64,000 nucleotides of DNA from the NCBI RefSeq assembly GCF_039654945.1, contig NW_027361738.1, positions 74,586,001 to 74,650,000 of the forward strand, given 5' to 3'. This document shows positions 10,519-33,690 of the stretch, one piece after another (the first letter of the stretch is position 1; every line of letters starts with the position of its first letter). This DNA comes from Dendrobates tinctorius (taxonomy: Eukaryota). A program made the position numbers and the translations under genes. The notes beneath the pieces were generated by a model. It did no database searches, was not told the DNA's origin, and worked only from the letters and a program-made list of their open reading frames with translations.

Positions 10519-10576
10519 GATGGATGCACAGCAGCAGCACAATCAGCAGCAATAATCTGCAGCTCAGCTGTCTCCC

Positions 10577-13034: not shown

Positions 13035-13073
<39 letters not shown>

Positions 13074-13296
13074 TGCTCAAATAAATGAAGGGAACACAAA
13101 CAGACTGTTGCAAATGGAAGTGTTCCCTTTATTTTTTTGAGCAATATATATATAGTTATATAGTTATGTTGCATATATACATATATATATAATTGTAGCA
13201 GTCTACTATAATATAATAATATTGTAATAAAACCCCCAGGGAGCACAGTCAGGTAGTTTGAGACAGCACATATAACACCTGTGTTGGATTTTCATA

Positions 13297-13540
13297 CTAA
13301 AACTACATCTCCCACAATCCCCGGAGCTTCAGCCTCTGTGTCGGACTACAACTGACCAATCAAATACCACTTCCTGTTTTTTTGCTAAAACTACATCTCC
13401 CACAATCCCCGGAGCTTCAGCTTCTGAGTCGGACTACAACTGACCAATCAAATACTACTTCCTGTTTTTTGCGTTCCAAAATGTATTCAAAACTGGGACG
13501 CAGCGTACACCGCGTGTTCTGATTGGCTGGTTTTTGTATC
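13297..13540 (+). promoter_or_regulatory. RPP38 housekeeping promoter built from a tandem 88-bp duplication
   Basis: Two copies (starting 13297 and 13385), each with ACTACAnnTCCCA (ZNF143/SBS-type), CCAAT and ACTTCCTG (ETS). A reverse CCAAT lies at ~13522 and another ACTACAATCCCCAGCA at ~13675. Confidence 0.7.
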
Positions 13541-13593
13541 AGTGTCGGTGCAGTCTATGTGACCACCCGGTGCATGGGGACGGAGAGCGGCGG
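13540..13593 (+). other. RPP38: Putative non-coding exon 1 of RPP38 (start approximate)
   Basis: Strong donor CGG|GTGAGT at 13594 just downstream of the promoter motifs; both RPP38 CDS copies are preceded by a polypyrimidine-AG acceptor. Confidence 0.55.
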
Positions 13594-14100
13594 GTGAGTT
13601 TATAAAGCTTGTGAGTCAGAATGACGTGCGGTATAGGAGAAATGAGCCCGTGCAATGTCACCCACGTTATGTGCACTACAATCCCCAGCACGCTCTCAGC
13701 ATTCCGTAGTGGAGAATGGTCGCTCCTTGGTGACGGTTTCCACACATATGACCATACTTTTTCAATGGCTAGTTTAGAGTCGGAAGGGAAAGTCCGCAGT
13801 AAATAGGTGTGTATATAATCACCAAGTGACAGAAATAATTCTATTTTTTTGACCCCTTATTTTACTATGATCATATCTCCCTTTATTTTGAGAGGTAGCG
13901 GTCAGATTTTACCATAAAATGTACTGGAAATGATGCAGTGTGTTGTTATATTTTGGGTTTCGCTTTTATGGTATTTATTGTGCAAAAAACAAAACCCCCA
14001 GATAAAATATATATAGCTCTGAACTTTGAAAAAAAAAAAAAAATTCTGACATTTTCTGAGATTCTGACTTTTTCATCCAGCGATGGAGCCGCCTCTCTAA

Positions 14101-14284
14101 GGCCGGGATCACACATTGCGAGGAATACAGCGGAATCTCGCATGTTAATACACGGCGCTGCCGCCGGCACTCGGATCGGAGCGCGAGGCCACATAGCAAT
14201 ACATGGAGCCGCACGCTCCGCTCCCGAGCACCGGGTATTACCATGCGAGATTCCGCTGTATTCCTCGCAATGTGTGATCCCGAC
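14101..14284. mobile_element. Palindromic Harbinger-like MITE
   Basis: GGCCGGGATCACACATTGCGAGGAATACAGCGGAATCTCGCATG ... its inverted copy ending TGTGTGATCCCGAC. Confidence 0.6.
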
Positions 14285-15484
14285 TCATTTTTTGTTGTGT
14301 GAAACAAGCTGACTTTTTTTCATGGTACCATGTTGGGGTACATATGATGTTTTGATTTCTCTTCATAGCATTTTCGGGGGGGAAAATATGGAAAAACCTG
14401 ACAGATCTTGAGTTTGGATTTTTAAAAAAAAATTTCTGTACATATATTTTTATACATTGAGATTCACTCAGCAGGCCCTAAATATTCTGTAAAAGGGTCA
14501 GGACAGCGGTCATAACGGACACAGACTCTGAGTGGCTGGCGAGACCGGATGCCGATCTGGTTCAGACTGCGGCTTCGGAGTCCACAGTGCAGAATCGGAG
14601 TCCAGAGCAGGACTGGGTGCTGAAGCTGGATCAGACCGTGTGGGTACTGGAACATTAGACCAGTACACACAGGTTCAGGGATAGATTCAGCTACAGGCAG
14701 GACGGGTTCCGACTTAACAGCTTGAAGACTAACTAAACACTAATATGGCTCGGGCACCCCCCTACAGGGGAATGTGCCTTAAATACTTCTCGTTTCCCAG
14801 CTATTGGCTGGGAACAGATCAGGAGTGTGTGCACAAATCCTTTAAGAATGGGGGATCACTCGCATCCTAAGCATGCAGTCAGGAGATCTGCACAGCGTTC
14901 AGGTTCTGGGGTGCTGGAGCAGAGGACACAGCCAGGCGGTTGAGGTGGTGAGCATGTTGGTGTCCCTGCCTGGGGAAGGGAGAGGAAACATGCAGGGACG
15001 CCAGCATTACACACTGTTCGGTCGGGAGAGCCTCCGGTTAGTCCGAACATTGCGTTGCGATCCTTGTCCAACTTTGTGACTCTTCCCTTATTCAGAAGAT
15101 GGTATGGAAGCTGTTAAAGACAGGATCGTTGATCCCTACTCACGGTGAGGGTTGTCTGAAAATGGTAGAACTCAGGTCCCCAATTGCCAAGGAAAACCAC
15201 ACACCCATTGATAACATTGCTCAGGCACCTATGGAGCTTCTTCCTTCTGTTTAACTGCTTAGATGCCATATTTGCTTTTGGCCATGGCATCTAAAGGACA
15301 AACGACAGGGATTGGCACTAGCGCTGACCTCTAGGGTTGCAGGAAAATGTCAACTTGCTATTGATGGAGTTTAGAGTTTCCAGACGTCGTACAGGTCATG
15401 ACAATTATTACATATTCCTCTATTGATCAAAATATATAGACATATGTATTTTTTTTCTTAGGGGGAAAAAAAAACAGCAGCAAC

Positions 15485-16306
15485 ATGGCGGCTAAGACCC
15501 CCAAAGGGCCCATACGGAAATCAAAACTAATCGTGTCTAAGACGTCTCTAAACAGCCCATATGAGAAGATCTGGACCCCGGAGGTTGGAGAGGACATGCA
15601 GTTCATCCTGCAGACTTTACTGAAAAAGTTTGAGGAACTTGGACTAAAAAAGTTGGAGAACCATACAAGATCCTCAAATGGCAAAAAGGGTCAAAAAGGA
15701 AAACTTTCTGATGGAAGCAAGGAGAAAGTCGCCGACAAAGAGATCCCGGAGGCGGAGGAGGCACAGAAGACAGGATGGACCTATGCAGATCTCAGGAAAC
15801 AGCTGGCCATAGGGATTAATGAGGTCACCCGGGCCTTGGAGAAGAATGACCTGGACATGGTGATCGTGTGTAAGTCCGCAAAGCCGGAGATGATCACAAG
15901 TCACATCATAGAGCTCAGCTACAGCCGGGGGGTCCCTGCCTGTCAGCTGCCGCGACTCAGTGAGAACGTGGCTCCAGCTCTCGGGATTAAGAGTGTGCTG
16001 GCACTGGGCTTCCAAAAAAGCTCTGACGTATTTCGCGAGCAAGTGTTATCAATAATGGCACTAATTCCCCCTCTACATGTCCCTCGGCTACCGACCGAAT
16101 GCGGGCAAAATGAAGATGTCAGTGTTTCAGTGGAAGATGATGGATCAGAAGAGGAGGAAAGCGTTATTCCGACCCCCGTCCAGAAAAGAACACTCTCTCC
16201 CTCTGAGCATCCACCAGATGTGAAGCTGCAGGAGCTAAAAGTTAAGATCGTCCCAAACCCCCTAAAAAAGCAGAAATTTAAAGAAATCGCTGATGAAAAA
16301 ATATAA
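15485..16306 (+). CDS. RPP38: Ribonuclease P/MRP subunit p38, copy A (273 aa, frameshifted C-terminus)
   Basis: KTSLNSPY, GWT...LRKQLAIGINEVTRALEK (L7Ae-like fold), VCKSAKPEMIT, PACQLPRLSE...LALGF; single coding exon after acceptor ttttcttag (15461); synteny. Confidence 0.9.
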   Translation: MAAKTPKGPIRKSKLIVSKTSLNSPYEKIWTPEVGEDMQFILQTLLKKFEELGLKKLENHTRSSNGKKGQKGKLSDGSKEKVADKEIPEAEEAQKTGWTYADLRKQLAIGINEVTRALEKNDLDMVIVCKSAKPEMITSHIIELSYSRGVPACQLPRLSENVAPALGIKSVLALGFQKSSDVFREQVLSIMALIPPLHVPRLPTECGQNEDVSVSVEDDGSEEEESVIPTPVQKRTLSPSEHPPDVKLQELKVKIVPNPLKKQKFKEIADEKI

Positions 16307-16856
16307 AAAACTCTTCCTGGATCCATAAAAACCGGAGAAAAAAATAAGAGGTTTCTGTATTATATTTTTTTTAACCTGCGACTGCAGTTGTGTGTTTTTT
16401 TTTTTTTTTTTGTTTTTTTTTATATATATGTGTTGTTTCCATCAGTTTCTAAATAAGTTAATTTTTTTCAGCTGAAATTGAAAAGTGTCCAACATTCACC
16501 TTCTGATCTGTGTTCTACTGTGGATAAAGTACAGCGCTGAGTGTTTTTTTTTTTTTCTAGATCATTGCGTTCTTGATTTCTTCCCATTTTACACATCGTC
16601 CCAACATTTTTAGACTTGGCCTGGTATAAATAACCAAACTCTATACTAGCATAATGTTTTGCAGCACAGGAAAAACTTCCATCTATGGCATATGGCTGAA
16701 TCCCAGAGCCGTTCACTGCAATCAGAGAAACAGAGTCTTTGCTCCTTGACTGCGGTGTCCATTTTTTTTGGACGGGCTCATGAACATATTAAAAACACAT
16801 GTGAAATGCACAAATGTGAACACGTTGGTCAGACAATGCTCACACCACCCATTTAC

Positions 16857-17369
16857 TAAGATATGACAAGAGAACATAGAATGGCAGATTTGCAAAAATT
16901 TGCAAAAATTCTCTGCAGCCAAAAAATATGGCAATAATCAGCAAGTGCTGAATAACAAATACAGGGTATTTAGTCGATACGTTTTTTTGCAAAAAAATGT
17001 ATACCAAGCTGCCTCACCAACGTCAAGGTAACCCGTGTCGAAGCAGTCCCTATCTAATGTATATTCCTGTGTGAATGTGCACAAAAAAGCTGTCTCAGAC
17101 CATCAGCCCACACTGGGGAGCAGCCTGTCTGAATCCTGTTCATGTCAAGACACTGTTCAGATGTTCAGGTATTTAATACATTAGATAGGGACTGCTTCGA
17201 CACGGGTTACCTTGACGTTGGTGAGGCAGCTTGGTATACATTTTTTTGCAAAAAAACGTATCGACTAAATACCCTGTATTTGTTATTCAGCACTTGCTGA
17301 TTGCCATATTTTTTGGCTGCAGAGAATTTTTGCAAATCTGCCATTCTATGTTCTCTTGTCATATCTTAG
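16857..17369. repeat. Long foldback inverted repeat (~200-bp arms, ~115-bp spacer)
   Basis: 16857-17061 is the near-perfect reverse complement of 17176-17369. Confidence 0.85.
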
Positions 17370-18610
17370 GGCGCATGAACATGGCTGTCTGAGCAGGACT
17401 CCTCAAGCAGGGAGCACAAGCAGAGTCAGTTTGACATCCATTTGTGTCCTTGCAGCGAATGACTCTAGGATTTAGATGTAGGCCCAGCACTGTAAAGCTC
17501 AGTGTGAATGTAGCCTTAGGGTATGTTTCCACGATCAGAGTTGGGGCTTGGTATCACCACACCTTATGTCGTCAGCCTTCCTTTGGGCAGAAGAACCTCT
17601 TTGCAGACACAGATATGGACGGTGCAAGAAACTTAGACCCGGGACTGCGTTAAGATGGCATAGGACGGCCAAGCGTCCCTCCACTGCCACGTGCAGAAAG
17701 GATCACGCATGCCGGCACCACTCATGGACAGAACACACACCGATGGTCCAGATAGGAAAAAAAAATTGGCAGTATGCACCTTTCTGGTCCAGATTACGGA
17801 CCCTTGTACCGTATGCAATACCAATGACCACACGTCCGCTTTTCAGATATGTGAATGGCCACTTTTTGTTTATATTGACCTCTAAACCTTGACTTAGACA
17901 TCATTCACATGGACCATTTTCATCAGTTTGCTGGATCTGATGTTCATCCCTTTTTTTTGTGGCATTTCATTTTTGCAAAAAAATAATCAGCTTCTCCTAC
18001 CCATTGAAAAATAGAAGGCAGCACTCGGGTGATACATGGATGGCGATCATGGGCGACGCATTGATTTCAGTGGGCAAGTTTGAGCTGTAAGTTAGATAAC
18101 AAAAAAGACACGTGTACGGATTTTTTTTTTTTTTTGTTGCATACACACAGCCCTCCAAAAACCCATGGACAAGTGAACAGCTCTATACAGACTATAACTG
18201 ATGCGTCTGTTTTTCACATACTTATGACATCCCTGTTCTTGGGTAGAACACGTGTAGAAACAAACCTCTGAATTAGACCTTCAAGAGAAACATTAGAAAT
18301 GCATAATGTCCCCCTGTGGATTTTTTTTTTTTTTTTTTAAACACAAATTTTATTTCAAATTTTCATAGACATTGCTTCATTTCACATGACAAGTCATTTT
18401 TCCAATAAACAGACAATAACTCAGCCTATCATCCTCCCTTCCTACCCTCCCTTAAACAAACCCTCTTCCTCTTACATTTTCAATGGTCTCCCCTAGCAAC
18501 TTCGCACACATGTTATGTCTAGACCACTTGTAAAACACAGATTGCAAGCATCACCTCTGTAAAATATCACCACACATTTATCCTTTTTAACTCCTGTCCC
18601 TACCAGGACC

Positions 18611-21600
18611 TTACACCTCGCCTTCATTAGCCAACTTCAGATTCCCCAAATTGTTTTGGATGTCTTCCAGTAGGTACCATTCAGTATATTTAAAGGGCCT
18701 TACTATTCTCCTTATTTCCTCTTCATCACATTGTCTTACTATGAAAAGCCTCCATTTTTTAAAGAATTTACCCGTCAGACCCTCCTTGTTCCTTTCCGCC
18801 TCCAGCTGTTCAATTCTGAGTAAAGATTTAATCTGTCCCATCACCTCTTCCATCGACGGCACACTTCCCTCAAGCCATTTGGACAGTAGAGCCCTCTTAC
18901 CTATCATAGCCACCCCATGAAACAATTTTGGTAATTTGGGCCTCTGTTCCTCTCCTCCTCTTACTACCTGTCCCTTGTTCCTATAATGAAAGATCCACAG
19001 CAATGGATCCATTTCAATTTCCACACTCCCCACTTTTTGCATAAATAATTGCAATCCTTTCCAGAATTTCTGGCTCTCTGGGCATTGCCAGATCCCATGG
19101 AACAGGTCTGTTTTTGGCAATTTACATTTGGGGCACTGAGTCACTCTGTTTATCTGTTGTGTATTTGGGATGTTAAAACCATAAATTGCTCTATGCATCA
19201 GTCTATATTGAGTGTCCCTCCAACCTTCATTAATCACCTCCTTCCTCATCTTCATCCACCCCTGTAATATCTTCTCCCCTGCTTCAGAGTCACCCAGTTG
19301 TCTTGCCCATGCTCTCCAGACTTGTTCTGGGCAGATTGGAATCAAAACCTCCCTCAAAGCTTTATATAATGCGGAGATAGAATTCTCATGTCGGTCTTTC
19401 ATAATAATTCTGTCCAAGTCATTCGTCACCTGTTCCATTCTAACATCCCTCAGTTGTGACATTAGCCCCTTTTCTATCTGTATTGGAGGATTTGAAATGT
19501 GGATAGCCCATATTTTGTCACGATTTCCTGGTATGTCAGCCATCTATTCTCCACCTCATGTATTAGATCTGTCACCCTTTTTATCCCCTTGTTCTTCCAT
19601 TCTGAAAATAATTTGTTGTCTCTTCCCGCTGGGAAATCTGGGAACCTCCATATATCAAGATGCTTGGATATTCTCCAAGACAACTTGAATTTTTTCCTCA
19701 CTGCCTTCCAGGCCATCACCGTATCTCTACATACCAGTGAGTGTTTAATGTTCCTTGGTATGTTGGCCAATGACGTGTGTAATAGTGCCCCTAAATCCCA
19801 GGGTTTACAAAAATCACTCTCCAAACGTATGTCAGAATGCCCATTTGTCTTCCTCAACCAGTCTATGGCATGTCTCATCAGGCATGCCAAATTATACCCT
19901 CTAATATTTGGCAGTTTAATGCCTCCTTGTTCCAAAGATTGCATCAATTTTTCCGTTTTAATTCTCGGTCTTTTCCCCCTCCATAGGAATGTCGAAAATG
20001 CTTTATTCAATCTATTTGTCTGTATGTTTCAACAACATGGGGATGGTCTGCATTGGGTAGAGTAACTTTGGAAAGCACATCATTTTCAAGAGATGATTTC
20101 TACCTAGCAGAGATAACGGTAGCCCTTCCCACAACTTCAATTCCCGTTCTATTTTCTGTATCAAAGGTTTGTAGTTTAAGTCATATATCGATGCTGACGT
20201 ACATCCCATCTGTATTCCTAGATATTTAAGATGTGACTTTGCTATTGGTATCCCACAGATTTCCCCCCTTGTTCCATCTGCTACCATTAGTGGCATCCTT
20301 TGCCCACAGAGAAATAGTATTTCACACTTTGTTCTGTTCAATTTAAAACCTGACAAGCTCCCAAACTCCTCTATCTGTCTTATCACTTTCGGTAGGTCCC
20401 TCTGAGGATTGTTCATGAATAATATAATATCATCCGCAAATAGCGCTGAGTGCAGTCGTTCCTTCCCAACACTAATGCCTTCGAAACAATCTCCTTCATT
20501 TAACAGTCGAGACAATGGCTCAATGGCAAGGTTAAACAGAAGGGGTGACAATGGACATCCCTGTCTAGTCCCTTTGTTCAAAGGGAAAGACTGCGACAGG
20601 AACCCGGGCGTTGCCACCCTCGCCTGAGGATTCGCGTATAATACTCCTATAAACGTACGAAAGGCTCCCTCTATCCCCATATTGTCGAGTACCGTCTCCA
20701 ACCATGTCCACCCCACGCTGTCGAACGCTTTTTCAGCATCAAGCGTGACCATGGCTGGACAGTCCTCCTTTCGAAGATCCCTGTGTCTAATAGCATCCAT
20801 TACCAACATGGCCCTCCGCACATTTGTCACCACTGCCCTCCCTTTAACAAACCCCGATTGTGCCGGTGAAATTAAATTTGGTATTATCTCCGCCAACCTA
20901 TTGGCCATCAATTTGGCCAAGATTTTAAGATCCTGATTTATTAATGAAATTGGCCTATAGTTTGCTGGATTGTCTAGATTCTTATCACCCTTGGGTATCA
21001 ATTTTATGTACGCAGTGTTGAGATGTCCCGAAATTCCACATCCTCCCAGTATTTTATTGTGCATTCTATTCAAAACCGGCGCTATCTGCTCTCCCATTTC
21101 TTTATAAAATTCCCCATTGAACCCGTCAGGTCCCGGTGTCTTGTGTATATTCAAATCCCTTATTACCGACTGTACTTCCTCTATTGTTATTTCCGCGTTC
21201 AATCTAGACAGCTCTTCCGAATTTATTTGCGAAAGTTTTATTTTTCCCAACAGATCACTTCCCCTGTCTCCCGTCTCTTCCCCCCTGCTATATAAATTCG
21301 CATAGTACTTCCCCAAAATCTCTGTAATCTCCTTTGGGTTTGAGGATTTGCTCCCGTCCGGTCTAGTCATATTAGTTATCAAGGTCATTGGTCGTCGTCC
21401 TTTCGCCAGATTGGCCAATAATTTCCCCGCTTTATTGCCAAATTTGTGTAGATCAACTTCCTGTTGTGATCGTATCAGGTCCTCTCTTTTCCCCACCCAA
21501 GAGTGAAATTCCTGTCTCGCTGCCTTCCACTCCTCTTTCGCACTTTGTGTCTTGTTTGCTAAGTACCCCGCGTATTTCTCTCTGAGGGCCTCGCTTGCGT

Positions 21601-22538
21601 TTTGGTATTGTTTATGAGTATGCTTTCTAAGTTTAGCTACATGTCCCATCAATCTACCTCTCAGTACTGTTTTTGCAGTTTCCCAGAACAACATTACATC
21701 CGCCGCATGTTCACTATTAGTACTGCTATAATCATCCCACCATTCGATCAGAGTTTTGGCAAATTCCTTGTCTCTAAGCAAAAACGACGGAAACCTCCAC
21801 AGATAATCTGTCCCCCTCTGTATTGTATCAGTGATGTCTAAAAGCACTGGGCTATGATCCGATATCACCATATCCTCAATAACCACATCTCTAACCCTAT
21901 GCATCAAAAGTTGGTCAACCAAAATGTAGTCAATCCTGGACCACGCTTCATGAGGATGTGAATAGTGAGTGTACTCCCGGTCATTTGGATGATGCAATCT
22001 CCAGCTATCTTTCAAATTTGTGTCCTCCAAAAGCTTGGCCATTAAACCTTTTACCTCTCTAATCGGCCTACCATCATCCCTACTATATCTCTTGTCTTCC
22101 CCCCTTGATACCACCGCATTAAAGTCCCCTCCAACCACCCTTTTGAGTTCCGTATCCTTTTCCAATTCCTGAGTGATGAAGTTAAAAAAAGAAGTTTGTT
22201 CATTATTGGGGGCATATATGTTATGTATACCAAATTCTCCCTGTGGACTGGAAAGCTTGATGTAGATATACCTCCCTTCCTCGTCATTGGTCTGAGACAC
22301 TATCGTGTGGTTAAAATTTTTGTTGATCAAAATCATCACCCCTGCCTTGCGTCCCATGGAGCCTGACCCAACTACTTTTCCCACCCATAGTTTTTGCATA
22401 CGAAAGAAATCTCCCTGGGGTAGATGAGTCTCCTGTAATAATGCTATATCCACTTTCAATCTTTTGAGGTGCCTCAATATCATCATACGTTTGTGGTGAC
22501 TTCAATCCTTTTACATTCCATGTCACTATTTTAACCAT
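18611..22538 (-). pseudogene. L1 ORF2p (APE endonuclease, RT, CCHC) split by three small frameshifts
   Basis: MVKIVTWNVKGL, LQETH, GGDFN, SRIDY, SDHSPV; RT motifs YRPISL, DAEKAFD, GTRQGCPLSP, FADD, KYLG; CPKC...HGIWQC. Frameshifts near 22490, 20012 and 19480. Confidence 0.9.
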
Positions 22539-23193
22539 TATCCCAATTCCTCAAATATGTCAAGTCGCCATGTGGTCTTTCATATGTGTGGTGTTTTGCT
22601 TCCTTCAAGCGTTCAGTGCGCTTATGCCGTTGCATTCCCTGTACCCATCCACCCTTCCTGTATCATTAACAATTAACAACCCCTCAACTATCCCCCCCTG
22701 TACAATCAAATGTCTCTGCACTCCCATTTTTTCTGTGATGCTCCTGGCTCCGCTATTCTCCCTCAGCCATTTAATTAAGAATTATACGTAGTCTATCCCT
22801 CATTAATTTATTACCCAACTAACCCAAACAAGGCCTTCTTGGTCAGTAGTCTAGCCAACATATAGCACCCCCTCCCTCCTTTCCCATGCATAATATTTGT
22901 CATTACTGAACCCAGAATCTTTCTTCTTCCCAGCTTTGTGGATACCTCAACATCCAACAGAGGAGTTTATCAAATAAAAATATAAATGCGAAAGAAACCC
23001 GATTTCCCCCCCCCCCAGATATTAGTACTCCCCTACCCCTACCCCTCAGAGTAAGCAAAACCCCAATATCAATAACATCTGGAGAGACGAGAGGAACCAG
23101 TAAGAAGAGGCCACTTCAACCCCCACTATCCGTCAATCTCTCCTCTCATAAATCCCTCAGTTCAGTCTTCAAACCTACTCCCCAGAGTCTCTC

Positions 23194-24375
23194 TCAAGGC
23201 ACTCCCCTGCCCTGGTTTCCCGACTTGTGTGACGGCGATCTTCGTGCCTTAGGGTTCTCCATGTGAGGCTCCTTCCCTTCCTCTCTCCTTTCAGTCCATT
23301 CGTTCCAGCCCTCCTCCCGAACCTCCCCTTCCCTCTCCCCGTGTCGACCACCCCTCCTCTCCGGAGATTCACTTGTCAGGTTTCTGTCCTCCATCTCCTC
23401 CATCCATCTCTCCGCCTCTCTCAAGTCCTTTGTCACAAAAAAAGATCCATTTCGTTTTGTCACTCTCAGAAGAGCAGGGTAGAGTAGTTGAAACTTTATA
23501 CCCTTGCGGTACAGTGCGGTGCATATCTTGCTGAAGGACTTCCTTTTCCGGGTGACCTCTGCCGAATAATCCCCAAAGATCAATATTTTATGTCCTTGAA
23601 GAGACAGTGGGGTCCTTCGTCCTCTAAATGCTCGCAACAACTCTTCTTTGTCCTTGTATTCCAAATATTTTATTATGACTTGGCGCGGTCTGGCTGTTCC
23701 AGTCACCCCTGCATTACCTTCCTTCCCGTCCGCTCCCCATGCGCCCGTGTTTTCTCTTACAGGGCCCACTCTGTGCGCTCTTTCCACTCTGCATCTGTGT
23801 GTCCGGCCCAGCGCCTTGGGAAGCTCTGCTTCACAAATGTTATCCAGCTGCCGCATGGTTATTGATTCCGGTAACCCCACCAGTCTTAAGTTGCTTCTCC
23901 TGGACCGGTTTTCTAGATCTTCCAGTTTGTCTTTCATAGCCTGGGAACCCTCCTCCATCTCCTTCATTTTCCCCTTTAACGTTGTCACCTCATCCTCTGT
24001 ATTAGATAATCTTTGTTCCAGCTCTGCCACTCTGGCTCCCTGCTGTGTGACCTGTTCTTTAATGGGGGATAGCGCCACCCCCACCATGGCCTCCAGGGAC
24101 TCCTTTATCTTGTCTGCCAGGTGTGCTGCCACTGCTCCTGCCAGGCGATCATAGTCTATGAGCACGTCCGTTAACTGACTGCTCTGCTGGGCTGCCGGCT
24201 GCTCATGCTGCCTTCTCCCCTCCTCCTCCATCAGGCTCTGCTCACCTCCCTGCAGACCGCTGTATCCCGCGTCTGCCCCGCCCGCCGCCATTTTGAGATC
24301 TCGTGCTGCGTGGTCTTCCCCAGCAGCTCCTGGCTTTAAATGCTTGCCGCCGCTCCGGAGAAGGTACCGCTCCAT
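23194..24375 (-). CDS. L1 ORF1p (coiled coil + RRM + CTD), intact, 393 aa
   Basis: LEDLENRSRRSNLRLVGLPES, VERAHRVG, RPRQVIIK, DYSAEVTRKRKSF, LLYPALLRV. Confidence 0.9.
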   Translation of the reverse strand: MERYLLRSGGKHLKPGAAGEDHAARDLKMAAGGADAGYSGLQGGEQSLMEEEGRRQHEQPAAQQSSQLTDVLIDYDRLAGAVAAHLADKIKESLEAMVGVALSPIKEQVTQQGARVAELEQRLSNTEDEVTTLKGKMKEMEEGSQAMKDKLEDLENRSRRSNLRLVGLPESITMRQLDNICEAELPKALGRTHRCRVERAHRVGPVRENTGAWGADGKEGNAGVTGTARPRQVIIKYLEYKDKEELLRAFRGRRTPLSLQGHKILIFGDYSAEVTRKRKSFSKICTALYRKGIKFQLLYPALLRVTKRNGSFFVTKDLREAERWMEEMEDRNLTSESPERRGGRHGEREGEVREEGWNEWTERREEGKEPHMENPKARRSPSHKSGNQGRGVP

Positions 24376-24981
24376 ATACCGGCGTCTCCTACTACTTATC
24401 CCTCACTTCCCGCTGTCTCCCGCAGCCTTGGGGTGATCTTTGTCGGTCTTTGTAGCTGAGGGGAGCGCGGAGCTCTGTCTCCTGCGTCCTCACATCACAG
24501 CACTGGAACCGGAAGTCCCCCCTGTGGATTTTAAGATTGGAGGCCCTGTGTAAACTGACTTGCGATGCATGCAGCCCATAAATGTCAAGATTTTTTTTTT
24601 TTTTGCCTTTTCCCTGCAGGTTTCACTCTTCACAATGAATGCCATAAAAACAAAACCCAAAATAATACACATTTGTCTTTTTCACTATAGGTAGATTTCT
24701 TTTTGACGTTTTTATTAAGAGTTATCCAGGTTTTTCACGAAAGTCTGCAGTCCCTGTATGTGACTGCAGACCTGTGAAACCTCTCGGAGCTTGCAGCGCG
24801 TGCTGTGAAGATCCTCCAGTTTCAGTGGCGAGATGGCGGATGTGACGACAAGTATGAGATATCCATACTTCCGGCCATACAAATAAAATGAGCGAGGTCG
24901 TGCACATCTAGTCGAACTGTGGCAAAACTGGAGAATCCTCAGTGTGCACGATGTGAAGATTCACAAATCTGCAGTCACATA

Positions 24982-25631
24982 CAGTGTCATGTAAAAGTCT
25001 GGGCACCCCTGCTCAAAATTACTGTTATTGATAAAGCAAGTTGAAGATGAAATGATCTCTAAAAAGGCCTAAAGTTAAAGATGACCCATTTCCTTTTGTA
25101 ATTTAGGCAAAAAAAAATTTTAATCTCTTGCATTTTAAAAATTACAAAAAGGAAAATGAACCGATGCAAAAGTTTGGTCACCCTGCATGGTTAGTATCTA
25201 GTAACACTCCCTTTTGAAAGTATCGCAGCTTGTAAATGGTTTTTTTTGTAGCCAGAGAAGAGTTTGTCAGTTCTTGCTTTGAGGGATTTTCATCCATTCT
25301 TCCTTGGATAATTCTTCCAGTTCTCTGAGAGTCGTCTTGCATCCTCTGCTATTTTGAGGCCTAGCCACAGATTGTCAATGATGTTTAGATCAAGGGACTG
25401 TGAGGGCCACTGTAAAACCTTCAGTGTGCGCCTTTTGAGGTCGTCTTTTGTGGACTTTGATGTGTGTTTAGGATCATTATCTATTTGTAGAAGCCATCCT
25501 CTTTTCAGTTTCGGCTTTTTTACAGATGGTGTTATGTGTGCATTGAGAATTTGTTGAAATTTAATTGAATCCATTATTCCCTCTACCCATGAAATGTTTG
25601 CCACCCCAAAGCATGATTGATCACCCCATGC
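24982..25631 (-). mobile_element. Tc1 remnant (3' part), interrupted by a TTAA element
   Basis: TA|CAGTGTCATGTAAAAGTCTGGGCACCCC terminus; ORF 25290-25604 with DNDPKH...WPSQSLDLNIIDNLW; a short continuation follows 29209. Confidence 0.8.
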
Positions 25632-25635
25632 TTAA

Positions 25636-28600: not shown

Positions 28601-29205
28601 AAATGTTCATTTTTTTTTTTAATATTCAAAAAATTCCTGTGACGCACCTAAAGGGTTAATAAACTTCTTGAATGTGGTTTTAAGCACCTTAAGGGGTGCA
28701 GTTTTTAGAATGGTGTCACTTTTGGGTATTTTCTATCATATAGACCCCTCAAAGTGGCTTCAAATGTGAAGTGGTCCCTAAAAATAAAATGGTGTTGCAA
28801 AAATGAGAAATCGCTGGTCAATTTTTAACCCTTATAACTTCCTAACAAAAAAAAATTTTGGTTCCAAAATTGTGCTGATGTAAAGTAAACATGTGGGAAA
28901 TGTTATGTATTAAGTTTTTTGTGTGCCGTATCTCTGTGATTTAAGGGCATAAAAATTCAAAGTTGGAAAATTGCGAAATTTTCAAAATTTTCGCCAAATT
29001 TCCGTTTTTTTCACAAATAAACGCAAGTTTTTTGAATGCAATTTTACCACTACCATGAAGTACAATATGTCACGAGAAAACCGTGTCAGAATCACCGGGA
29101 TCCATGAAAGCGTTCCAGAGTTATGACCTCATAAAGATACAGTGGTCAGAATTGTAGAAATTGGCCCGGGAGTTAACGTGCAAACCACCCTTGGTACTGA
29201 AGGGG
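25636..29205. mobile_element. Non-autonomous piggyBac-like element (3.6 kb) with internal tandem repeats
   Basis: TTAA|CCCCTT...AAGGGG|TTAA; several ~380-bp internal repeats at about 27170-28700; no transposase ORF. Confidence 0.75.
27079..27165 (+). repeat. Interstitial telomere-like (TTAGGG/CTAGGG)n tract
   Basis: CTAGGGTTAGGGCTAGGGTTAGGGCTAGGGTTAGGGTTAGGGCTAGGG, then degenerate units. Confidence 0.85.
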
Positions 29206-29910
29206 TTAATGGTAGGCAAGATGTTTTTTTTTTTTGTTTTTTTTCAGAAATTCTGTGCCCTTTTTGGTGGAGTTGGAGTCAGTATAAAATGGACCAACTC
29301 CTCCTAAAGTATAAAATTAAATTGAGTTCAGTAGTACAATGCAGGATGTGCTGTAAATGTTATCATAATAATTTGGGAAAGTTTTGAAATGTCCTATAAA
29401 TATCTGTTCCTGATCTAAGGAACTATGCTTTTAGTTGAGCTAAATCTGTGCTGCACTTTATGGACATGCTCAGCAGTGACCAGTGCTGTGGAGTCGGGTG
29501 GCTTGGTTTACCGCCTCCACCGCTCTGCATCTAACTGCGCCCTTTGGGGAAAAAGAAAAGTTATGGGTCTTGAAAAAGTGGAAGGAAAAAGCGCAAAAGA
29601 GGAAATTGGGAGTGGTGGGAAGGAAGGAGTTAGGATTTATGAATGATGTCCTATAAGGGTTTTAGAGATGTAGGGAGGTTTTTACTCAACTTTAATCCTT
29701 TTTTTTTTTTTTTTGGGGGGGGAGTTAAGCCCTAAGGACTCTTTTTTCTGCTTGCATAACACCAGCGCCCCCTATCTGTATTGTCCGTACAGTACAACCA
29801 AAGAAGCTCCATAGGGATGTACTGTAAGCAGACATCTGGCTCTCCAGGAGCAACGTCATCCAGGAGTGGCGCTATAGAGTTATACAAATGATTACTTAAT
29901 GCCCTATGGT

Positions 29911-30570
29911 AAAGAGGAAAAAAGACGCGCACTCTTGCTACAGAGGTGCTGACTGAACGTGGAATTGTTCCACTGACCGTGATTCAGAGGATGAGCAGTC
30001 ACACTCAGAATCTCATAATTTGCAGAAAGTTTTATTTCAATCACAAAATATAATGATAATACTTCACCGCAGTAGAAAAGGCAAGATATTCCAGAAGTAT
30101 AAGGTAACGTTTCCACCATATCCCAGGTCTTTGTCAAACCTTACTGGAGAGAATAAGAAAGTATAAAGAAACTTGATAAAGATATTTACAAGAAAAAAAA
30201 GTACAAGAAAACATACACAAATAAATCTGATAGTGCTGTACAATTATATACAAATATATACAAGTTTGAAAAGACACAGGATCCTACGAAAATAAATCCA
30301 TGGACTCAAAGTCATAAGATGCAAAAGGCTTCATGGCATTGTGAATTATATGTTCTTGTAAATATCTTTATCAAGTTTCTTTATACTTTCTTATTCTCTC
30401 CAGTAAGGTTTGACAAAGACCTGGGATACGGTGGAAACGTTACCTTATACTTCTGGAATATCTTGCCTTTTCTACTGCGGTGAAGTATTATTATTTTTTG
30501 TGATTGAAATAAAACTTTTTCTGCAAATTACAGTCTATGAGATTCTGAGTGCAACTGTTTATCCTCTGGG
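29911..30570. mobile_element. Non-autonomous Penelope-type foldback insertion with two mirrored minimal hammerhead motifs
   Basis: 15-bp TSD TTAATGCCCTATGGT (29896, 30571); ~210-bp inverted arms (about 29985-30195 and 30352-30568); absent from the paralogous block near 12690. Confidence 0.7.
30404..30447 (+). ncRNA. Minimal hammerhead ribozyme-like motif, U3-A8 variant (mirror copy at 30100-30143 on -)
   Basis: TAAGGT-TTGACAA-A-GACC tgggatac GGTG-GAAA-CGT-T-ACCTTA: 6-bp stem I, palindromic stem III AACGTT, one mismatch at the base of stem II. Confidence 0.5.
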
Positions 30571-31245
30571 TTAATGCCCTATGGTTCGGACGTGGAAAAC
30601 GTCAGTCATTTTATTCCTATATGCCCCTTAAGGGCACAATAAATCCACCTTTTTCCAAGCCACTAATATATAACTTTTACTTTCTTAACTAAAAGTTACC
30701 CTAAGAAATCTATGGTGGAGACTTCTATATACAATTAAAATCTCAAGGAAGTGTATGAATGAATCAGAAAGCTATATAAATTCAATATGGATTATTATTA
30801 TAGCAAAGTAGTGTCCAACACTGGTGAGGGTGATGTGGATGATGCGGCATGTAGAAAGAAAGTGTACACTAAATTAAAAAAACTGCCCTAATTCTGTGAC
30901 TATTTCTATGCAGCTGTCACGCTCGGGTCGGGAGAGCCGCCGGCCAGTCTGAGCATTGCGTTGCCATCCTCGTCCAAGTTTGTGACACTTCCCTTTTTCA
31001 GAAGACCGTACGGAAGCTGGAAACAATAGGATCATTGAACTCAGGCTCTCAGTTGCCAAAGAAAACCACACACCCCTTGATAACATTGCTCTGGCTCCTA
31101 TGGAGCTTCTTCCTTTTCTTTAACTGCTTAGATGCCATATTTGCTTTTGGCCATGGCATCTAAAGGACAAACAACCAGAATTGGAGCTAGCGCTGACCTC
31201 TGGTGTTGCAGGAAAATATCACCTTGCTATTGATGTCGTTTAGAG

Positions 31246-31896
31246 CAGGGCTGTGGAGTCGGAGTCGTGGAGTCGGAGTCGGTGCTCATTTTGGTGGAGT
31301 TGGAGTCGGAGTTGGAGTCGGTATAAAATGGGCCGACTCCGACTCCTAAAATATATAATAAATTGGGTACAGTAATTCAATGCAGGATGTGCTGAATATT
31401 TTTTCATAGGAGTTTGGGAAAGTTATGAAATGTCCTATAAATGGCTGTTCTATTCCTGATCTAAGGCTACATTCACACACAGCGTTTTTCCTGTGTTTTT
31501 TGAGGTTACGTTTTTCAGCTGCAAAAGTTGATCATCTTTTTAAAAAACTGCATCACCTGAAAGGTTTTTGAGCTCATAGATAATGTTACTCAATAGCAAA
31601 AGCAGATTAGAAATCTGCTCTATCTATCCATTTATCCATATCTGTCTATCCATATCGTATCTGTACCAAAAAGAATGAAAACCGGGTAGTACACCAATAT
31701 ATATTCTGTTCTATCTAAATATCTTGATTATTGGATCATAAAAATGATTAAATGTCTGAGGTTCACATTGTACTACAATAAATTTTTCACTTAAATATAA
31801 GCAATATGTGTGGGAGTCGGAGTTGGAGTCGGAGTCGGTGTAAGGGAAATTGAGGAGTCGGAGTCGCAGGTTTGGTTTACCGACTCCACAGCCCTG
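31246..31896. mobile_element. hAT-like MITE (GGAGTC-repeat family)
   Basis: TIR CAGGGCTGTGGAGTCGG...CCGACTCCACAGCCCTG; 8-bp TSD GTTTAGAG/GTTTACAG; absent from the equivalent site upstream of RPP38 copy A. Confidence 0.85.
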
Positions 31897-32002
31897 GTTT
31901 ACAGTTTCCAGATGTTGGACAGGTCAGGAAATTTATAAAATATTCCTCTATTAATTAAAACATGTTCTTTTTTTTTTCCTTAGGGCAAAAAACAGCAACA
32001 AC

Positions 32003-32866
32003 ATGGCGGCCAAGACCCCCAAAGGGCCCATACGGAAATCAAAACCAATCGTGTCTAAGACGTCTCTAAACAGCCCATATGAGAAGATCTGGACCCCGGT
32101 GGTCGGAGAGGACATGCAGTTCATCCTGCAGACTTTACTGAAAAAGTTTGAGGAACTCGGACTAAAAAAGTTGGAGAACCATACAAGATCCTCAAATGGC
32201 AAAAAGGGTCAAAAAGGAAAACTTTCTGATGGAAACAAGGAGAAAGTCGCCGACAAAGAGATCCCGGAGGCGGAGGAGGCACAGAAGACAGGATGGACCT
32301 ATGCAGATCTCAGGAAACAGCTGGCCATAGGGATTAATGAGGTCACCCGGGCCTTGGAGAAGAATGACCTGGACATGGTGATCGTGTGTAAGTCCGCAAA
32401 GCCGGAGATGATCACAAGGCACATCATAGAGCTCAGCTACAGCCGGGAGGCCCCTGCCTGTCAGCTGCCGCGACTCAGCGAGAACGTGGCTCCAGCTCTC
32501 GGCCTGAAGTCTGTGTTGGCACTGGGCTTCCGAAAAAGCTCTGATGTATTTCAAGAGCAAGTGTTAGCAATAAAGGCACGAGTTCCCCCTCTACATGTCC
32601 CTTGGCTACCAACCGGATTTGGGCAAAATGAAGATGTCTGTGTTTCAGAGGCAAATTCAGAAGAGGAGAAAAGCGTTATTCCGACCCCTTCCAGAAAACG
32701 GAAATTCTCCCCCTCTGAGCGTCCGCCAGATGTGAAGCTGCAGGAACTAAAAGTTAAGAAGATCGTCCCAAACCCGAAAAAGAAGCGTAAAGTTAAAGTA
32801 AAGAAATCGCTTGTGAAAAAAATTACAAAAACTCTTCCTGGTTCCATAAAAAAAGAGAAAAAATAA
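32003..32866 (+). CDS. RPP38: Ribonuclease P/MRP subunit p38, copy B (287 aa, intact Lys-rich tail)
   Basis: Paralogue of 15485-16306; keeps VPWL and KKIVPNPKKKRK; acceptor ttcttag at 31983; AATAAA at 32862 and 32984. Confidence 0.92.
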   Translation: MAAKTPKGPIRKSKPIVSKTSLNSPYEKIWTPVVGEDMQFILQTLLKKFEELGLKKLENHTRSSNGKKGQKGKLSDGNKEKVADKEIPEAEEAQKTGWTYADLRKQLAIGINEVTRALEKNDLDMVIVCKSAKPEMITRHIIELSYSREAPACQLPRLSENVAPALGLKSVLALGFRKSSDVFQEQVLAIKARVPPLHVPWLPTGFGQNEDVCVSEANSEEEKSVIPTPSRKRKFSPSERPPDVKLQELKVKKIVPNPKKKRKVKVKKSLVKKITKTLPGSIKKEKK

Positions 32867-33264
32867 AATGTTTCTTTATTTTTTTTAACCTGCGACTGCA
32901 GTGGTTTTTTTTTTTTTGTTTTTTTTAATGAATTTCCAGGGATTGGAACAAAAACTGTTGTGTTTCCGTGTGTCGGGGTGTATAATAAAACTGCTACAAA
33001 TGTTTTCCAAGGTGTTACCTTTTCTTCCCTCATTGCCATCTGTATTAATTCAATAAGAACCCCCCCCCCCCAAAAAAAAAAAAAAAAATTATTTCTGCCC
33101 TCAATTATTGACGGCCTTCATATTGGAACACGGAATCCCCAGATATCCTTTTCAAAGGGCTGTATTAAAACTTGGGTATTCTTATCTAGATGGCATATCG
33201 GTACGATATGATCAATTGTGTCTTACCTCTGGGACACCCACCGATCCTGGTCACGCACAAGGAA

Positions 33265-33690
33265 CTGTAGGAGGTGAGCTGTGACAGCACCTATTGTGGC
33301 TCCTGTGTGTCATCTCCTATATATAGATCTGTCTTCAGTCATTGTACAGGAGGAGTAGGAGGTGAGCTGTGATATCGCCTATTGGGAATGGTGGCTCCTG
33401 TATTATCTGCTGTATATAGAGGTGTTATCAGTCATTGTACAGGAGAAGGAGGCGAGCTGTGATATCACCTATTGTGGCTCGTGTGTTTACTGTATATAGA
33501 TCTGTCTTCAGTCATTGTACAGGAGGAGGAGGCGAGCTGTGATATCACCTATTGTGGCTCTTGTGTGTTTACTGTATATAGATCTGTCTTCTGTCATTGT
33601 ACAGGAGGAGGAGGTGGTGAGCTGTGATATCACCTATTGGGAATGGTGGCTCCTGTGTTATCTGCTGTATATAGAGGTGATATCATATTG
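33265..33690. repeat. Tandem repeat of about five 80-90 bp units
   Basis: Repeated AGGAGGnGAGCTGTGATATCACCTATTG...TATATAGA...CAGTCATTGTAC. Confidence 0.75.

What the first reader, a model, noticed from the sequence alone, without database searches (positions are those of the whole stretch)
13297..32990. Tandem RPP38 duplication: one promoter, two alternative terminal coding exons?
Seen: block ~12165-16410 is duplicated at ~29545-32920. The second block jumps from the equivalent of ~13008 to ~15015, so it lacks the ZNF143/CCAAT/ETS promoter and the exon-1 donor at 13594, and I saw no replacement promoter. Copy B nevertheless keeps its acceptor (31983), an intact ORF and AATAAA (32862, 32984). 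Copy A has AATAAG at the equivalent place and no AATAAA in the next ~450 nt. Inference: exon 1 splices either to A (1.9-kb intron) or past A to B (18.4-kb intron), giving mutually exclusive isoforms of an RNase P/MRP subunit that is normally single-copy.
Basis: partly seen in the sequence, partly recalled or inferred. Interest (0 to 1): 0.7.

Follow-up and report, generated by a model that had tools for sequence, protein, structure and literature searches.

The report
Duplicated frog RPP38 sharing one promoter
In the dyeing poison frog an old tandem duplication of the RNase P/MRP subunit gene RPP38 left the downstream copy without a promoter; RNA assemblies show that this copy, the conserved and more abundant one, is expressed by splicing from the upstream copy's first exon across 18 kb, while the upstream coding exon is slowly decaying. 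It is a tidy example of a known kind of event, and NCBI's gene models already include the splice.

Summary
Two Rpp38 (L7Ae/Pop3) coding exons, A (CDS 15485-16306) and B (CDS 32003-32866), lie in tandem in Dendrobates tinctorius. B lacks the ~2-kb promoter/exon-1 segment.

The key prediction is confirmed. A transcript contig joins exon 1 (to 13593) exactly to B's exon start (31984) and carries all 11 B-diagnostic letters. NCBI model XP_073438037.1 encodes the same junction.

B-type RNA is the main form in all four runs laid. Perfect-match A-specific contigs occur in two runs, at roughly 15-19% of B's k-mer depth. An exon 1-to-A junction was not seen.

Comparative data change the story:
- Phyllobates terribilis keeps a promoter/exon 1 in front of B, so the ancestral event was a whole-gene duplication.
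- The promoter deletion in B is shared by Dendrobates and Ranitomeya.
- B evolves like single-copy frog RPP38 (dN/dS ~0.27; 1-2 changes at 78 conserved sites).
- A-types are relaxed (7-17 changes; dN/dS 0.4-0.8). A is broken by an insertion in R. imitator and has a frameshifted tail in D. tinctorius.
- The first ~450-500 nt of A's exon in D. tinctorius were overwritten by B (gene conversion).

Verdict: real, mechanistically clear, a new member of a known kind, of moderate interest.

The parts
13289..13464 (+). Promoter region: two tandem 88-nt modules (13289-13376, 13377-13464, 93% alike), each with an ACTACA..TCCCACAATCC (ZNF143-type) motif, a CCAAT box and CTTCCTG (ETS-type)
   Evidence: (family D14), 7 and 39: these are the only such motifs in the 64-kb window. 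R. variabilis, R. imitator and P. terribilis have one module each (alignment offsets). Function is inferred from motifs only.
13540..13593 (+). Exon 1 (the 3' part seen in RNA; its 5' end is not determined), donor GG|GTGAGT. It contains an ATG at 13574.
   Evidence: the X18 contig has 54 nt on this side of the joint.. NCBI P0001 starts at this ATG.
13594..15461 (+). Intron between exon 1 and copy A (1.87 kb). 13010-15019 is the segment missing from copy B.
   Evidence: There is no RNA depth except over a repeat at 14100-14228.
15462..16411 (+). Copy A coding exon (CDS 15485-16306, 273 aa, Rpp38-like). Its 3' end is not determined. Only AATAAG at 16343 and 16452.
   Evidence: A-specific perfect contigs: X17 15914-16241 and X1 15993-16205, which cross 33 and 23 A/B-diagnostic sites.
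15462..15960 (+). Gene-conversion tract in copy A, overwritten by copy B: about 98% identical to B against about 85% further 3'
   Evidence: D4; sliding window; segment tree: Dt_A+Dt_B at 100% support inside the B clade. The 3' boundary is approximate (15900-15985).
17527..18086 (+). Exon 1b: an alternative upstream exon for B (ATG 18040, donor CT|GTAAGT after 18086)
   Evidence: NCBI isoform X1 (P0121, 309 aa), located. X14 contig record 15 covers 17527-17952 and 18004-18086, then continues for 107 nt off the stretch. Its use in D. tinctorius runs was not shown.
18611..24375 (-). Non-LTR retrotransposon (LINE) that fills much of the A-B spacer: ORF1 393 aa; ORF2 824 aa with endonuclease and reverse-transcriptase domains, plus downstream ORF fragments
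29548..30866 (+). Copy B's upstream block, homologous to A 12169-13009
   Evidence: 78-91% in three pieces.
30867..30925 (.). Junction of the ~2-kb deletion that removed B's promoter, exon 1 and most of its intron
   Evidence: The right-hand breakpoint (window 15020/30926) is at the same place in R. variabilis (L002 15781) and R. imitator (L008 ~23404).
30926..31983 (+). Remnant of B's intron with its polypyrimidine tract and acceptor AG (31982-31983). It is interrupted by a 651-bp element with terminal inverted repeats (31246-31896).
31984..33010 (+). Copy B coding exon (CDS 32003-32866, 287 aa; 300 aa if the exon-1 ATG is used). AATAAA at 32862 and 32984. The 3' end is approximate.
   Evidence: B-type contigs are the main form in X17, X18, X1 and X14. 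Small transcriptome-sized runs hold 0.76-0.90 of its words.

Best explanation
The locus is one working RPP38 gene assembled from the halves of two old tandem duplicates.

Steps, each marked as shown or inferred:
1. Shown: a whole-gene tandem duplication (upstream region, promoter, non-coding exon 1, intron, single coding exon) predates the split of Phyllobates from Dendrobates+Ranitomeya.
2. Shown: in the Dendrobates+Ranitomeya lineage the downstream copy B lost about 2 kb holding its promoter, exon 1 and most of its intron, but kept its acceptor, ORF and AATAAA signals.
3. Shown: B is transcribed from the upstream copy's promoter. Exon 1 (donor after 13593) is spliced across an 18.4-kb intron, which contains copy A's exon, repeats and a LINE, to B's acceptor (exon starts 31984).
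4. Shown: B is the conserved orthologue of vertebrate RPP38. Shown only roughly, from contig k-mer depth: B is the more abundant RNA.
5. Shown: copy A's exon is still present in processed RNA at a lower level. Inferred, not observed: it is spliced from the same exon 1 and so acts as a proximal alternative terminal exon.
6. Shown: A-type exons evolve under relaxed constraint in all four species. A is broken in R. imitator. In D. tinctorius it has lost most of the basic C-terminal tail and its AATAAA. Its first ~450-500 nt were overwritten by B through gene conversion.
For: RNA evidence (checked):
- Joint 13594->15469 in X18 with 54 nt of exon 1 and 'GC' between. This reads GGCAAAAAAC, which is B's exon start, followed by all 11 A/B-diagnostic letters in B's state.
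- The main contig in all four runs carries B letters: 35 of the 37 listed letters equal copy B.
- A-specific contigs with 0 differences: X17 (328 nt, depth 23.6 against 126.5 for B) and X1 (213 nt, depth 4.6 against 31.1).
- No depth over intron sequence apart from repeats, so the runs behave as RNA.

Database models:
- P0001/XP_073438037.1 is the exon-1 ATG plus B.
- R. imitator P0122 has the same design.
- In R. variabilis NCBI files the A-type (X3) and B-type (X1, X2) proteins as isoforms of one gene.

History:
- P. terribilis B keeps a promoter/exon-1 homologue, collinear with A from about 3 kb upstream.
- The deletion breakpoint is shared by D. tinctorius, R. variabilis and R. imitator.

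Evolution:
- 3'-half tree: A-types are monophyletic (support 87-95), and the AU test rejects species-wise pairing (p=0.005).
- 5'-half tree: Dt_A groups with Dt_B (support 100) inside the B clade.
- dN/dS: B orthologues 0.26-0.28, the same as Bufo-Eleutherodactylus (0.25). A-types 0.39-0.75; 0.83 for the Dt_A-Rv_A 3' half.
- Deviations at 78 columns that are >=95% conserved in 112 other tetrapod Rpp38: B 1-2; Rv_A 17; Pt_A 16; Dt_A 7.
- R. imitator A is split by a 5.66-kb insertion with a 14-nt target-site duplication, and has a frameshift.
Against: - No contig showing exon 1 joined to A's GGGGAAAAAAAAAC start was listed, so A's promoter is inferred.
- All RNA evidence comes from per-run assembled contigs, not reads. 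The junction rests on one contig in one run, plus NCBI's model, which may draw on some of the same public data. Depth ratios are rough, and the tool itself warns against ranking by depth.
An extra start site there, or at exon 1b, is not excluded.
- A-types are not neutral. Rv_A-Pt_A pN/pS is 0.44 (Fisher p=1e-5 against 1), and ORFs remain open in three of four species. 'Decaying relic' may therefore understate a retained or modified function.
Confidence: 0.8

Rival explanations
1. Regulated isoform pair. Exon 1 is deliberately spliced either to A or to B, and A encodes a maintained, functionally distinct Rpp38 variant, for example one with altered RNA binding or altered nucleolar targeting. 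On this view A is not a decaying relic.
For: - A ORFs are open in D. tinctorius, R. variabilis and P. terribilis.
- Rv_A-Pt_A pN/pS is 0.44, significantly below 1.
- Neutral simulation gives P(no stop) of only 0.03-0.2 per species.
- A is present in processed RNA.
- A's acceptors are conserved.
- The tail changes touch the region homologous to the human nucleolar-targeting segment NS38 (PMC2150555; alignment).
Against: - A is destroyed in R. imitator.
- A-types carry 16-17 replacements at sites conserved across tetrapods, including the GINEVTRALEK motif in Rv_A and Pt_A.
- P. terribilis A lacks 14 conserved N-terminal residues.
- The changes differ between species, with no common new signature beyond a few shared substitutions.
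- Episodic B-to-A conversion can mimic constraint.
Confidence: 0.2
2. Copy B is mainly driven by its own start site: exon 1b near 17.5-18.1 kb, or an unrecognised promoter (possibly transposon-derived) closer to B. On this view the exon 1-to-B splice is a minor read-through product.
For: - NCBI isoform X1 (P0121) starts in exon 1b.
- The X14 contig is continuous from 17527 to the donor at 18086 and then leaves the stretch.
- There is a weak CpG-rich window at 17501-17800.
Against: - The only junction contig reaching B's 5' end in the organism-A runs, which match this window without differences over copy A (taken here to be D. tinctorius), carries exon 1 (X18).
- Those runs (X17, X18, X1) have zero depth at 17642-17975, so exon 1b is not continuous there.
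- No B-type contig extends into the intron remnant upstream of the acceptor.
- There is no CpG-rich window or ZNF143-type motif between 26.1 and 32.4 kb.
- The exon-1-to-B design recurs in the R. imitator model.
Confidence: 0.1
3. Assembly artefact: the two copies are alleles or a collapsed or expanded repeat, and the duplication is not real.
For: No long genomic reads were examined here.
Against: - The copies differ by 11% with many indels and have different flanks.
- Both are transcribed as distinct sequences in independent runs.
- The same two-copy order occurs in three other species' assemblies, with orthologous A and B clades.
Confidence: 0.02

Closest known systems
Vertebrate RPP38 (human Rpp38, chain C of the RNase P holoenzyme structures 6AHR/6AHU)
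   Same: - Copy B aligns over residues 7-268 with E=3e-62.
- Pfam L7Ae and Pop3 hits are above their cut-offs.
- The gene has a single coding exon preceded by a non-coding exon.
- An ACBP-domain gene lies upstream on the opposite strand. An NMT gene lies downstream in P. terribilis.
- The basic C-terminal tail aligns with the mammalian tail, which in human is the nucleolar-targeting segment (PMC2150555).
   Different: Here there are two tandem coding exons behind one promoter. In the other tetrapods among the best 120 hits only one protein type per genome was seen.
Tandem exon duplication giving mutually exclusive or substituted exons (reviewed in PMC9013439 and PMC9741552; found, abstracts only read)
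   Same: Homologous tandem exons, each with its own acceptor, are chosen alternatively after one shared upstream exon.
   Different: - Classical cases are internal exons that rejoin a common downstream exon, and both forms are usually ancient, highly expressed and constrained.
- Here each alternative is a complete terminal coding exon with its own stop and poly(A) region.
- The arrangement arose by deletion within a whole-gene duplicate.
- One alternative is decaying.
Alternative last exons, and tandem chimerism or 'conjoined' transcripts between neighbouring genes (from general knowledge; no paper read here)
   Same: Transcription from an upstream gene's promoter skips that gene's terminal exon and poly(A) site and splices into an acceptor of the downstream gene.
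   Different: Here the downstream unit has no promoter of its own in Dendrobates and Ranitomeya, so the through-splice is the main route of expression for an essential gene and not a minor by-product.
Duplication-degeneration-complementation model of duplicate retention (Force et al. 1999; from general knowledge)
   Same: Complementary loss in two duplicates makes both loci necessary.
   Different: The complementary losses fall on different kinds of part: the promoter in one copy and coding quality in the other. The outcome is effectively one composite gene and not two subfunctionalised genes.

Membership tests
Rpp38 / Pop3 (L7Ae-fold subunit of RNase P and MRP) | L7Ae-type domain and Pop3 profile above the curated cut-offs | tested here: met
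   A: PF01248 35.8 bits (cut-off 22.1) and PF08228 22.4 bits (cut-off 22). B: 31.4 and 29.8 bits.
Rpp38 / Pop3 (L7Ae-fold subunit of RNase P and MRP) | Orthology to vertebrate RPP38 by best hits and gene neighbourhood | tested here: met
   the named hits are almost all 'ribonuclease P protein subunit p38'; 6AHR_C at E=3e-62. An ACBP gene lies upstream and an NMT gene downstream in P. terribilis.
Rpp38 / Pop3 (L7Ae-fold subunit of RNase P and MRP) | Conservation of residues that are invariant across tetrapod Rpp38 | tested here: met
   Met for B (1-2 deviations of 78). Not met for A-types (Rv_A 17, Pt_A 16, Dt_A 7).
Rpp38 / Pop3 (L7Ae-fold subunit of RNase P and MRP) | Physical association with RNase P/MRP RNA | not testable with these tools
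   Needs biochemistry.
Alternative terminal exons behind one promoter | Shared first exon spliced to the distal exon (B) | tested here: met
   (X18 joint); P0001.
Alternative terminal exons behind one promoter | Shared first exon spliced to the proximal exon (A) | tested here: inconclusive
   A-specific RNA contigs exist, but no junction contig was listed. R. variabilis NCBI models file the A-type as an isoform of the same gene.
Alternative terminal exons behind one promoter | Each terminal exon has its own stop and poly(A) signal | tested here: inconclusive
   B has AATAAA at 32862 and 32984. A has only AATAAG in D. tinctorius, whereas the A-types of the other species keep AATAAA at +126 to +147. 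RNA 3' ends cannot be seen in contigs.
Whole-gene tandem duplication followed by promoter loss | Collinear homology that includes upstream sequence, promoter and exon 1 in at least one lineage | tested here: met
   P. terribilis A 933-11132 against B 19852-25837, including the promoter/exon 1 (4133-4478 against 23382-23724, 81%).
Whole-gene tandem duplication followed by promoter loss | The same deletion breakpoint in the lineages that lack the promoter | tested here: met
   window 15020/30926 = L002 15781 = L008 ~23404.
Gene conversion between paralogues | Discordant phylogenies in adjacent segments | tested here: met
   segment trees, AU tests; sliding window 97-100%, then 79-90%.
Pseudogene (for copy A) | Disabling lesions | tested here: inconclusive
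   R. imitator: clear (insertion plus frameshift). D. tinctorius: only a 5-nt deletion that changes and shortens the tail. R. variabilis: none.
Pseudogene (for copy A) | Neutral evolution (dN/dS about 1) and no expression | tested here: not met
   Rv_A-Pt_A pN/pS is 0.44 (p=1e-5 against 1). A-specific RNA is present. Only the Dt_A-Rv_A 3' half (0.83) is compatible with neutrality.

The most novel reading that the evidence does not exclude
Two readings remain open.

1. The A exon is not just a relic but a maintained, lineage-specific Rpp38 variant produced by regulated choice of terminal exon. Its altered RNA-binding motif or tail would give a distinct RNase P or MRP sub-complex, or a non-nucleolar role.

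2. More generally, the locus documents a route by which two tandem duplicates re-fuse into one gene through complementary loss: the promoter in one copy, coding quality in the other. This creates a long intron that houses the dying exon.
Probability: 0.2. Interest if true: 0.6.

Novelty: new member of a known kind. Interest (0 to 1): 0.4.

Why it matters
RPP38 is an essential, normally single-copy subunit of RNase P and MRP. This locus captures several evolutionary steps across four sequenced poison frogs:
- a whole-gene duplication;
- loss of the promoter in the copy that stayed functional;
- rescue of that copy by long-range splicing from the other copy's first exon;
- relaxed evolution, gene conversion and eventual breakage of the bypassed exon.

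It is a clean natural example of how tandem duplicates can merge back into one composite gene and how an intron can grow around a dying exon.

It is also a practical warning for annotation. NCBI names the pieces inconsistently between species: as one gene with isoforms in R. variabilis, and under 'p38-like' names that suggest separate genes in R. imitator and P. terribilis.

It does not reveal a new kind of mechanism.

Tried and rejected
- Exact-product look-ups found nothing for B (287 aa), P0001, P0002 and P0009. Only the longest product of each gene is on record, so I used the longest isoforms or the A-type proteins instead. No assembled transcript could be fetched this way.
- Two IQ-TREE runs failed for technical reasons and were repeated.
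- I tested whether D. tinctorius B's upstream block (29548-30866) is closer to P. terribilis B-upstream than to A-upstream. The result was indecisive: 76-82% against 79%. The claim that this block belongs to the original duplication therefore rests on collinearity only.
- I expected Dt_A's tail to have lost nearly all basic residues. By count it keeps 8 K/R against 19 in B and about 10 in mammals. The 'lost nucleolar signal' idea is therefore weaker than it first looked and is kept only as a hypothesis.
- The neutral simulation of ORF survival is only suggestive: P is 0.03-0.2 per species.
- A literature search for RPP38 with Dendrobates found nothing. A search for precedents of 'tandem duplicates / chimeric transcript / lost its promoter' gave nothing specific.
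- I built no joined (spliced) sequence to search with. The junction was read from the database protein P0001 and from in-frame translations of each exon by reference.

Full report
**1. The observation**

The window contains two tandem copies of an Rpp38-type coding exon. Self-BLAST and repeat finding give three collinear blocks:
- A 12169-13009 matches B 29548-30866 (78-91%, in pieces).
- A 15020-15376 matches B 30926-31245 (83-89%).
- A 15369-16411 matches B 31897-32926 (89.5%).

A 13010-15019 has no counterpart in B. B carries a 651-bp element with terminal inverted repeats at 31246-31896.

Both ORFs are intact: A 15485-16306 (273 aa) and B 32003-32866 (287 aa). They are 89% identical. Both hit Pfam L7Ae and RNase_P_pop3 above the curated cut-offs.

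Two tandem 88-nt modules (13289-13464) each carry ACTACA..TCCCACAATCC, CCAAT and CTTCCTG, and these are the only such motifs in the 64 kb. The donor follows 13593. A's exon starts at 15462 and B's at 31984. B has AATAAA at 32862 and 32984. A has only AATAAG at 16343 and 16452. There are no N runs in the window.

**2. Whose genome, and what is already on record**

Protein A is encoded exactly in GCA_039654945.1, with an ACBP-domain gene upstream on the other strand.

The word-index protein search names the organism as Dendrobates tinctorius. It returns XP_073438037.1 (P0001, 300 aa, 'p38-like isoform X2'), which is 100% identical to B over B's full length. Its sequence is MGTESGGAKNSNN followed by B. 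MGTESG is the translation of 13574-13591 in exon 1. AKNSNN-MAAK... is the in-frame translation from 31985.

So NCBI's annotation already contains the exon 1 (13593) to B (31984) splice.

A second model, X1 (P0121, 309 aa), replaces the first residues with MAIMGDALISVGKFEL. I located this at 18040-18086, with donor CT|GTAAGT, and call it exon 1b.

I built no joined spliced sequence for any search. The junction was read from the database protein and from per-exon translations.

**3. RNA evidence**

Small, transcriptome-sized public runs hold 0.76-0.90 of the words of B's exon. I used 85% likeness so that B transcripts would also align on A and show themselves by their letters.

The runs behave as RNA. 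There is no depth over intron sequence except a repeat at 14100-14228.

Results:
- **(a)** In all four runs the main contig over the exon carries B's letters. Of the 37 listed differences, 35 equal copy B's base; the other two lie beside an indel.
- **(b)** In run X18 a 572-nt contig joins 54 nt of exon 1 to the coding exon, with the letters 'GC' between the aligned sides. Read with the window sequence this is ...GCGGCGG|GGCAAAAAAC, which is B's exon start; A would read GGGGAAAAAAAAAC. The contig then carries all 11 A/B substitutions of 15469-15978 in B's state. This is the predicted 13593|31984 junction.
- **(c)** Perfect-match A-specific contigs exist in X17 (15914-16241, depth 23.6 against 126.5 for the B contig) and in X1 (15993-16205, depth 4.6 against 31.1). 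They cross 33 and 23 diagnostic sites with no difference. The flanking intron has no depth, so A's exon is in processed RNA, at roughly 15-19% of B by k-mer depth. This is a rough figure, and the tool warns against ranking by depth.
- **(d)** No contig showing exon 1 joined to A was listed.
- **(e)** In X14, from a related organism, a contig covers 17527-18086, stops at the exon-1b donor and continues for 107 nt off the stretch. In the three organism-A runs (X17, X18, X1), which match this window without differences over copy A and which I take to be D. tinctorius, depth is zero at 17642-17975.

**4. Other poison frogs**

- **R. variabilis (L002).** Promoter/exon 1 at about 7752-8011, A at 9979-10906 and B at 16174-17175. 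B's intron remnant begins at the equivalent of window 15020. NCBI files the A-type (X3) and the B-types (X1, X2) as isoforms of one gene.
- **R. imitator (L008).** Same order and the same breakpoint (about 23404). Its B model P0122 starts in exon 1. Its A exon is split after codon ~41 by a 5.66-kb insertion flanked by a 14-nt duplication (ATCCTGCAGACTTT), and it has a frameshift further on.
- **P. terribilis (L003 and L004 merged).** A and B are 14.6 kb apart. B still has its own promoter/exon-1 homologue (merged 23382-23724 against A 4133-4478, 81%) with CCAAT, ETS-type and inverted CCAAT boxes and a GT donor. It lies within collinear homology that starts about 3 kb upstream.

The ancestral event was therefore a whole-gene tandem duplication. 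The ~2-kb promoter/exon-1 deletion in B is a later event shared by Dendrobates and Ranitomeya.

**5. Evolutionary statistics**

- **Trees.** For codons 150 to the end, the A-types of the three species form a clade (support 87-95), and the AU test rejects species-wise pairing (p=0.005). For codons 1-150, Dt_A groups with Dt_B (support 100) inside the B clade next to Rv_B.
- **Sliding window.** Identity of Dt_A to Dt_B is 97-100% up to about codon 150, then 79-90%. This indicates B-to-A gene conversion of about 450-500 nt in D. tinctorius.
- **dN/dS.** B orthologues: 0.26-0.28, equal to Bufo against Eleutherodactylus (0.25). A-types: 0.39-0.75. Rv_A-Pt_A pN/pS is 0.44, which is still below 1 (p=1e-5). 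The Dt_A-Rv_A 3' half is 0.83, not different from 1.
- **Conserved sites.** At 78 columns that are >=95% conserved in 112 other tetrapod Rpp38 proteins, B-types deviate at 1-2, Rv_A at 17, Pt_A at 16 and Dt_A at 7. Six of Dt_A's seven lie outside the converted tract.
  - The hits include the GINEVTRALEK segment (Rv_A GTHEVRKALNK; Pt_A GINGVTWALEK). In L7Ae-family proteins this corresponds to the RNA-contacting NE..K motif; that statement is from general knowledge and was not tested here.
  - Pt_A also lacks 14 conserved N-terminal residues.
- **Dt_A's tail.** Dt_A has 3-nt and 5-nt deletions that turn the tail KKKRKVKVKKSLVKK... into LKKQKFKEIADEKI. In human Rpp38 the last 24 residues, with nine lysines, are sufficient and needed for nucleolar targeting (PMC2150555). 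The frog tails align to that region in mammals. The loss of basic residues in Dt_A is partial: 8 K/R against 19 in B.
- **Neutral simulation.** The chance that the A ORFs stay open is 0.03-0.2 per species, which is only suggestive.

**6. How it most likely works**

One promoter at about 13.3-13.5 kb drives a non-coding exon 1. Most mature RNA skips A's exon and joins exon 1 to B across 18.4 kb. B supplies the conserved Rpp38 protein.

A minority of RNA contains A's exon, most simply as a proximal alternative terminal exon. That junction is inferred.

In D. tinctorius the loss of A's AATAAA would favour transcription running on to B; the other species keep AATAAA at the same place. This effect is inferred.

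The exon-1 ATG is in frame with B, giving 13 extra residues. With A it opens a 17-codon upstream ORF that overlaps A's start codon out of frame. This ATG is not conserved in R. variabilis, so I give it little weight.

Rival readings:
- A regulated, functionally distinct A isoform (about 0.2).
- A separate main start site for B, such as exon 1b (about 0.1).
- An assembly artefact (about 0.02).

**7. Comparison with what is known, and novelty**

The protein family is plain vertebrate RPP38 (6AHR_C, E=3e-62).

The architecture resembles tandem-exon-duplication substitution events (PMC9013439, PMC9741552) and alternative last exons or tandem-gene chimeric transcripts. It differs in three ways: each alternative is a whole terminal coding exon, the arrangement arose by a deletion inside a whole-gene duplicate, and one alternative is decaying.

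It fits a duplication-degeneration-complementation logic in which the complementary losses are a promoter and coding quality.

No paper linking RPP38 and Dendrobates was found. The splice itself is already in NCBI's models. I rate it a new member of a known kind, of moderate interest.

**8. Limits**

- All RNA evidence is from assembled contigs of coded runs. Tissue, strand, transcript ends and true abundance are unknown.
- The junction rests on one contig plus NCBI's model, and the two may not be fully independent.
- NMT2 downstream in this window was not checked by me.

Noticed in passing
window 13289-13464: The 88-nt promoter module (ZNF143-type motif + CCAAT + ETS-type) is tandemly duplicated only in D. 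tinctorius. R. variabilis, R. imitator and P. terribilis each show a single module (alignment offsets differ by 88 nt).
   Followed up: partly
window 13574-13593 with 15463-15496 and 31985-32005: The ATG in exon 1 is in frame with B's start (13 extra residues, as in NCBI X2). With A it opens a 17-codon upstream ORF that overlaps A's ATG out of frame.
   Followed up: yes
window 18611-24375 (minus strand): A long LINE between the copies. ORF1 is 393 aa with no Pfam hit. ORF2 is 824 aa with endonuclease and reverse-transcriptase domains, followed by 178-aa and 310-aa ORF fragments, so ORF2 is interrupted.
   Followed up: partly
window 11001-11879 and 24678-24993: Related repeats: 132-149-nt units, in 4 tandem copies at 11.15-11.83 kb. 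One unit, plus a 94-nt stretch that is 97% identical, lies just beyond the LINE's ORF1 start. They may be tandem monomers of the LINE's 5' region, with a solo fragment near the ACBP/RPP38 intergenic region.
   Followed up: no
window 27174-28611: Tandem array of about 385-nt units (about 4 copies, 72-93% alike) in the A-B spacer.
   Followed up: no
window 31246-31896 and 29318-29409: A 651-bp element with GAGTCGGAGTCG-rich terminal inverted repeats is inserted in B's intron remnant. A related fragment (85% over 92 nt) lies 2 kb upstream.
   Followed up: no
window 33317-33685: Tandem repeats of about 80 nt just downstream of copy B's 3' end.
   Followed up: no
window 14100-14228 and 16790-17370: Very high contig depth in all runs, with opposite-strand joints. 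These are transcribed interspersed repeats and not part of the gene.
   Followed up: no
L005 4325/9985 (= L008 5021/10681), R. imitator: A 5.66-kb insertion with a 14-nt target-site duplication and a T-run at one end splits the A-type coding exon. NCBI's 218-aa 'p38-like' model starts at an internal Met and bridges a frameshift with an intron.
   Followed up: yes
L004 1-10067 and L003 1-20795, P. terribilis: A thioesterase-domain (OLAH-like) gene model on the same strand spans the whole RPP38 region and ends 67 nt into copy B's coding exon. It is probably a read-through or chimeric model.
   Followed up: no
L002 8159, R. variabilis: NCBI isoform X1 (322 aa) begins about 150 nt downstream of the exon-1 homologue, with an unrelated N-terminal extension. 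Like D. tinctorius exon 1b, this looks like a species-specific minor 5' variant.
   Followed up: no
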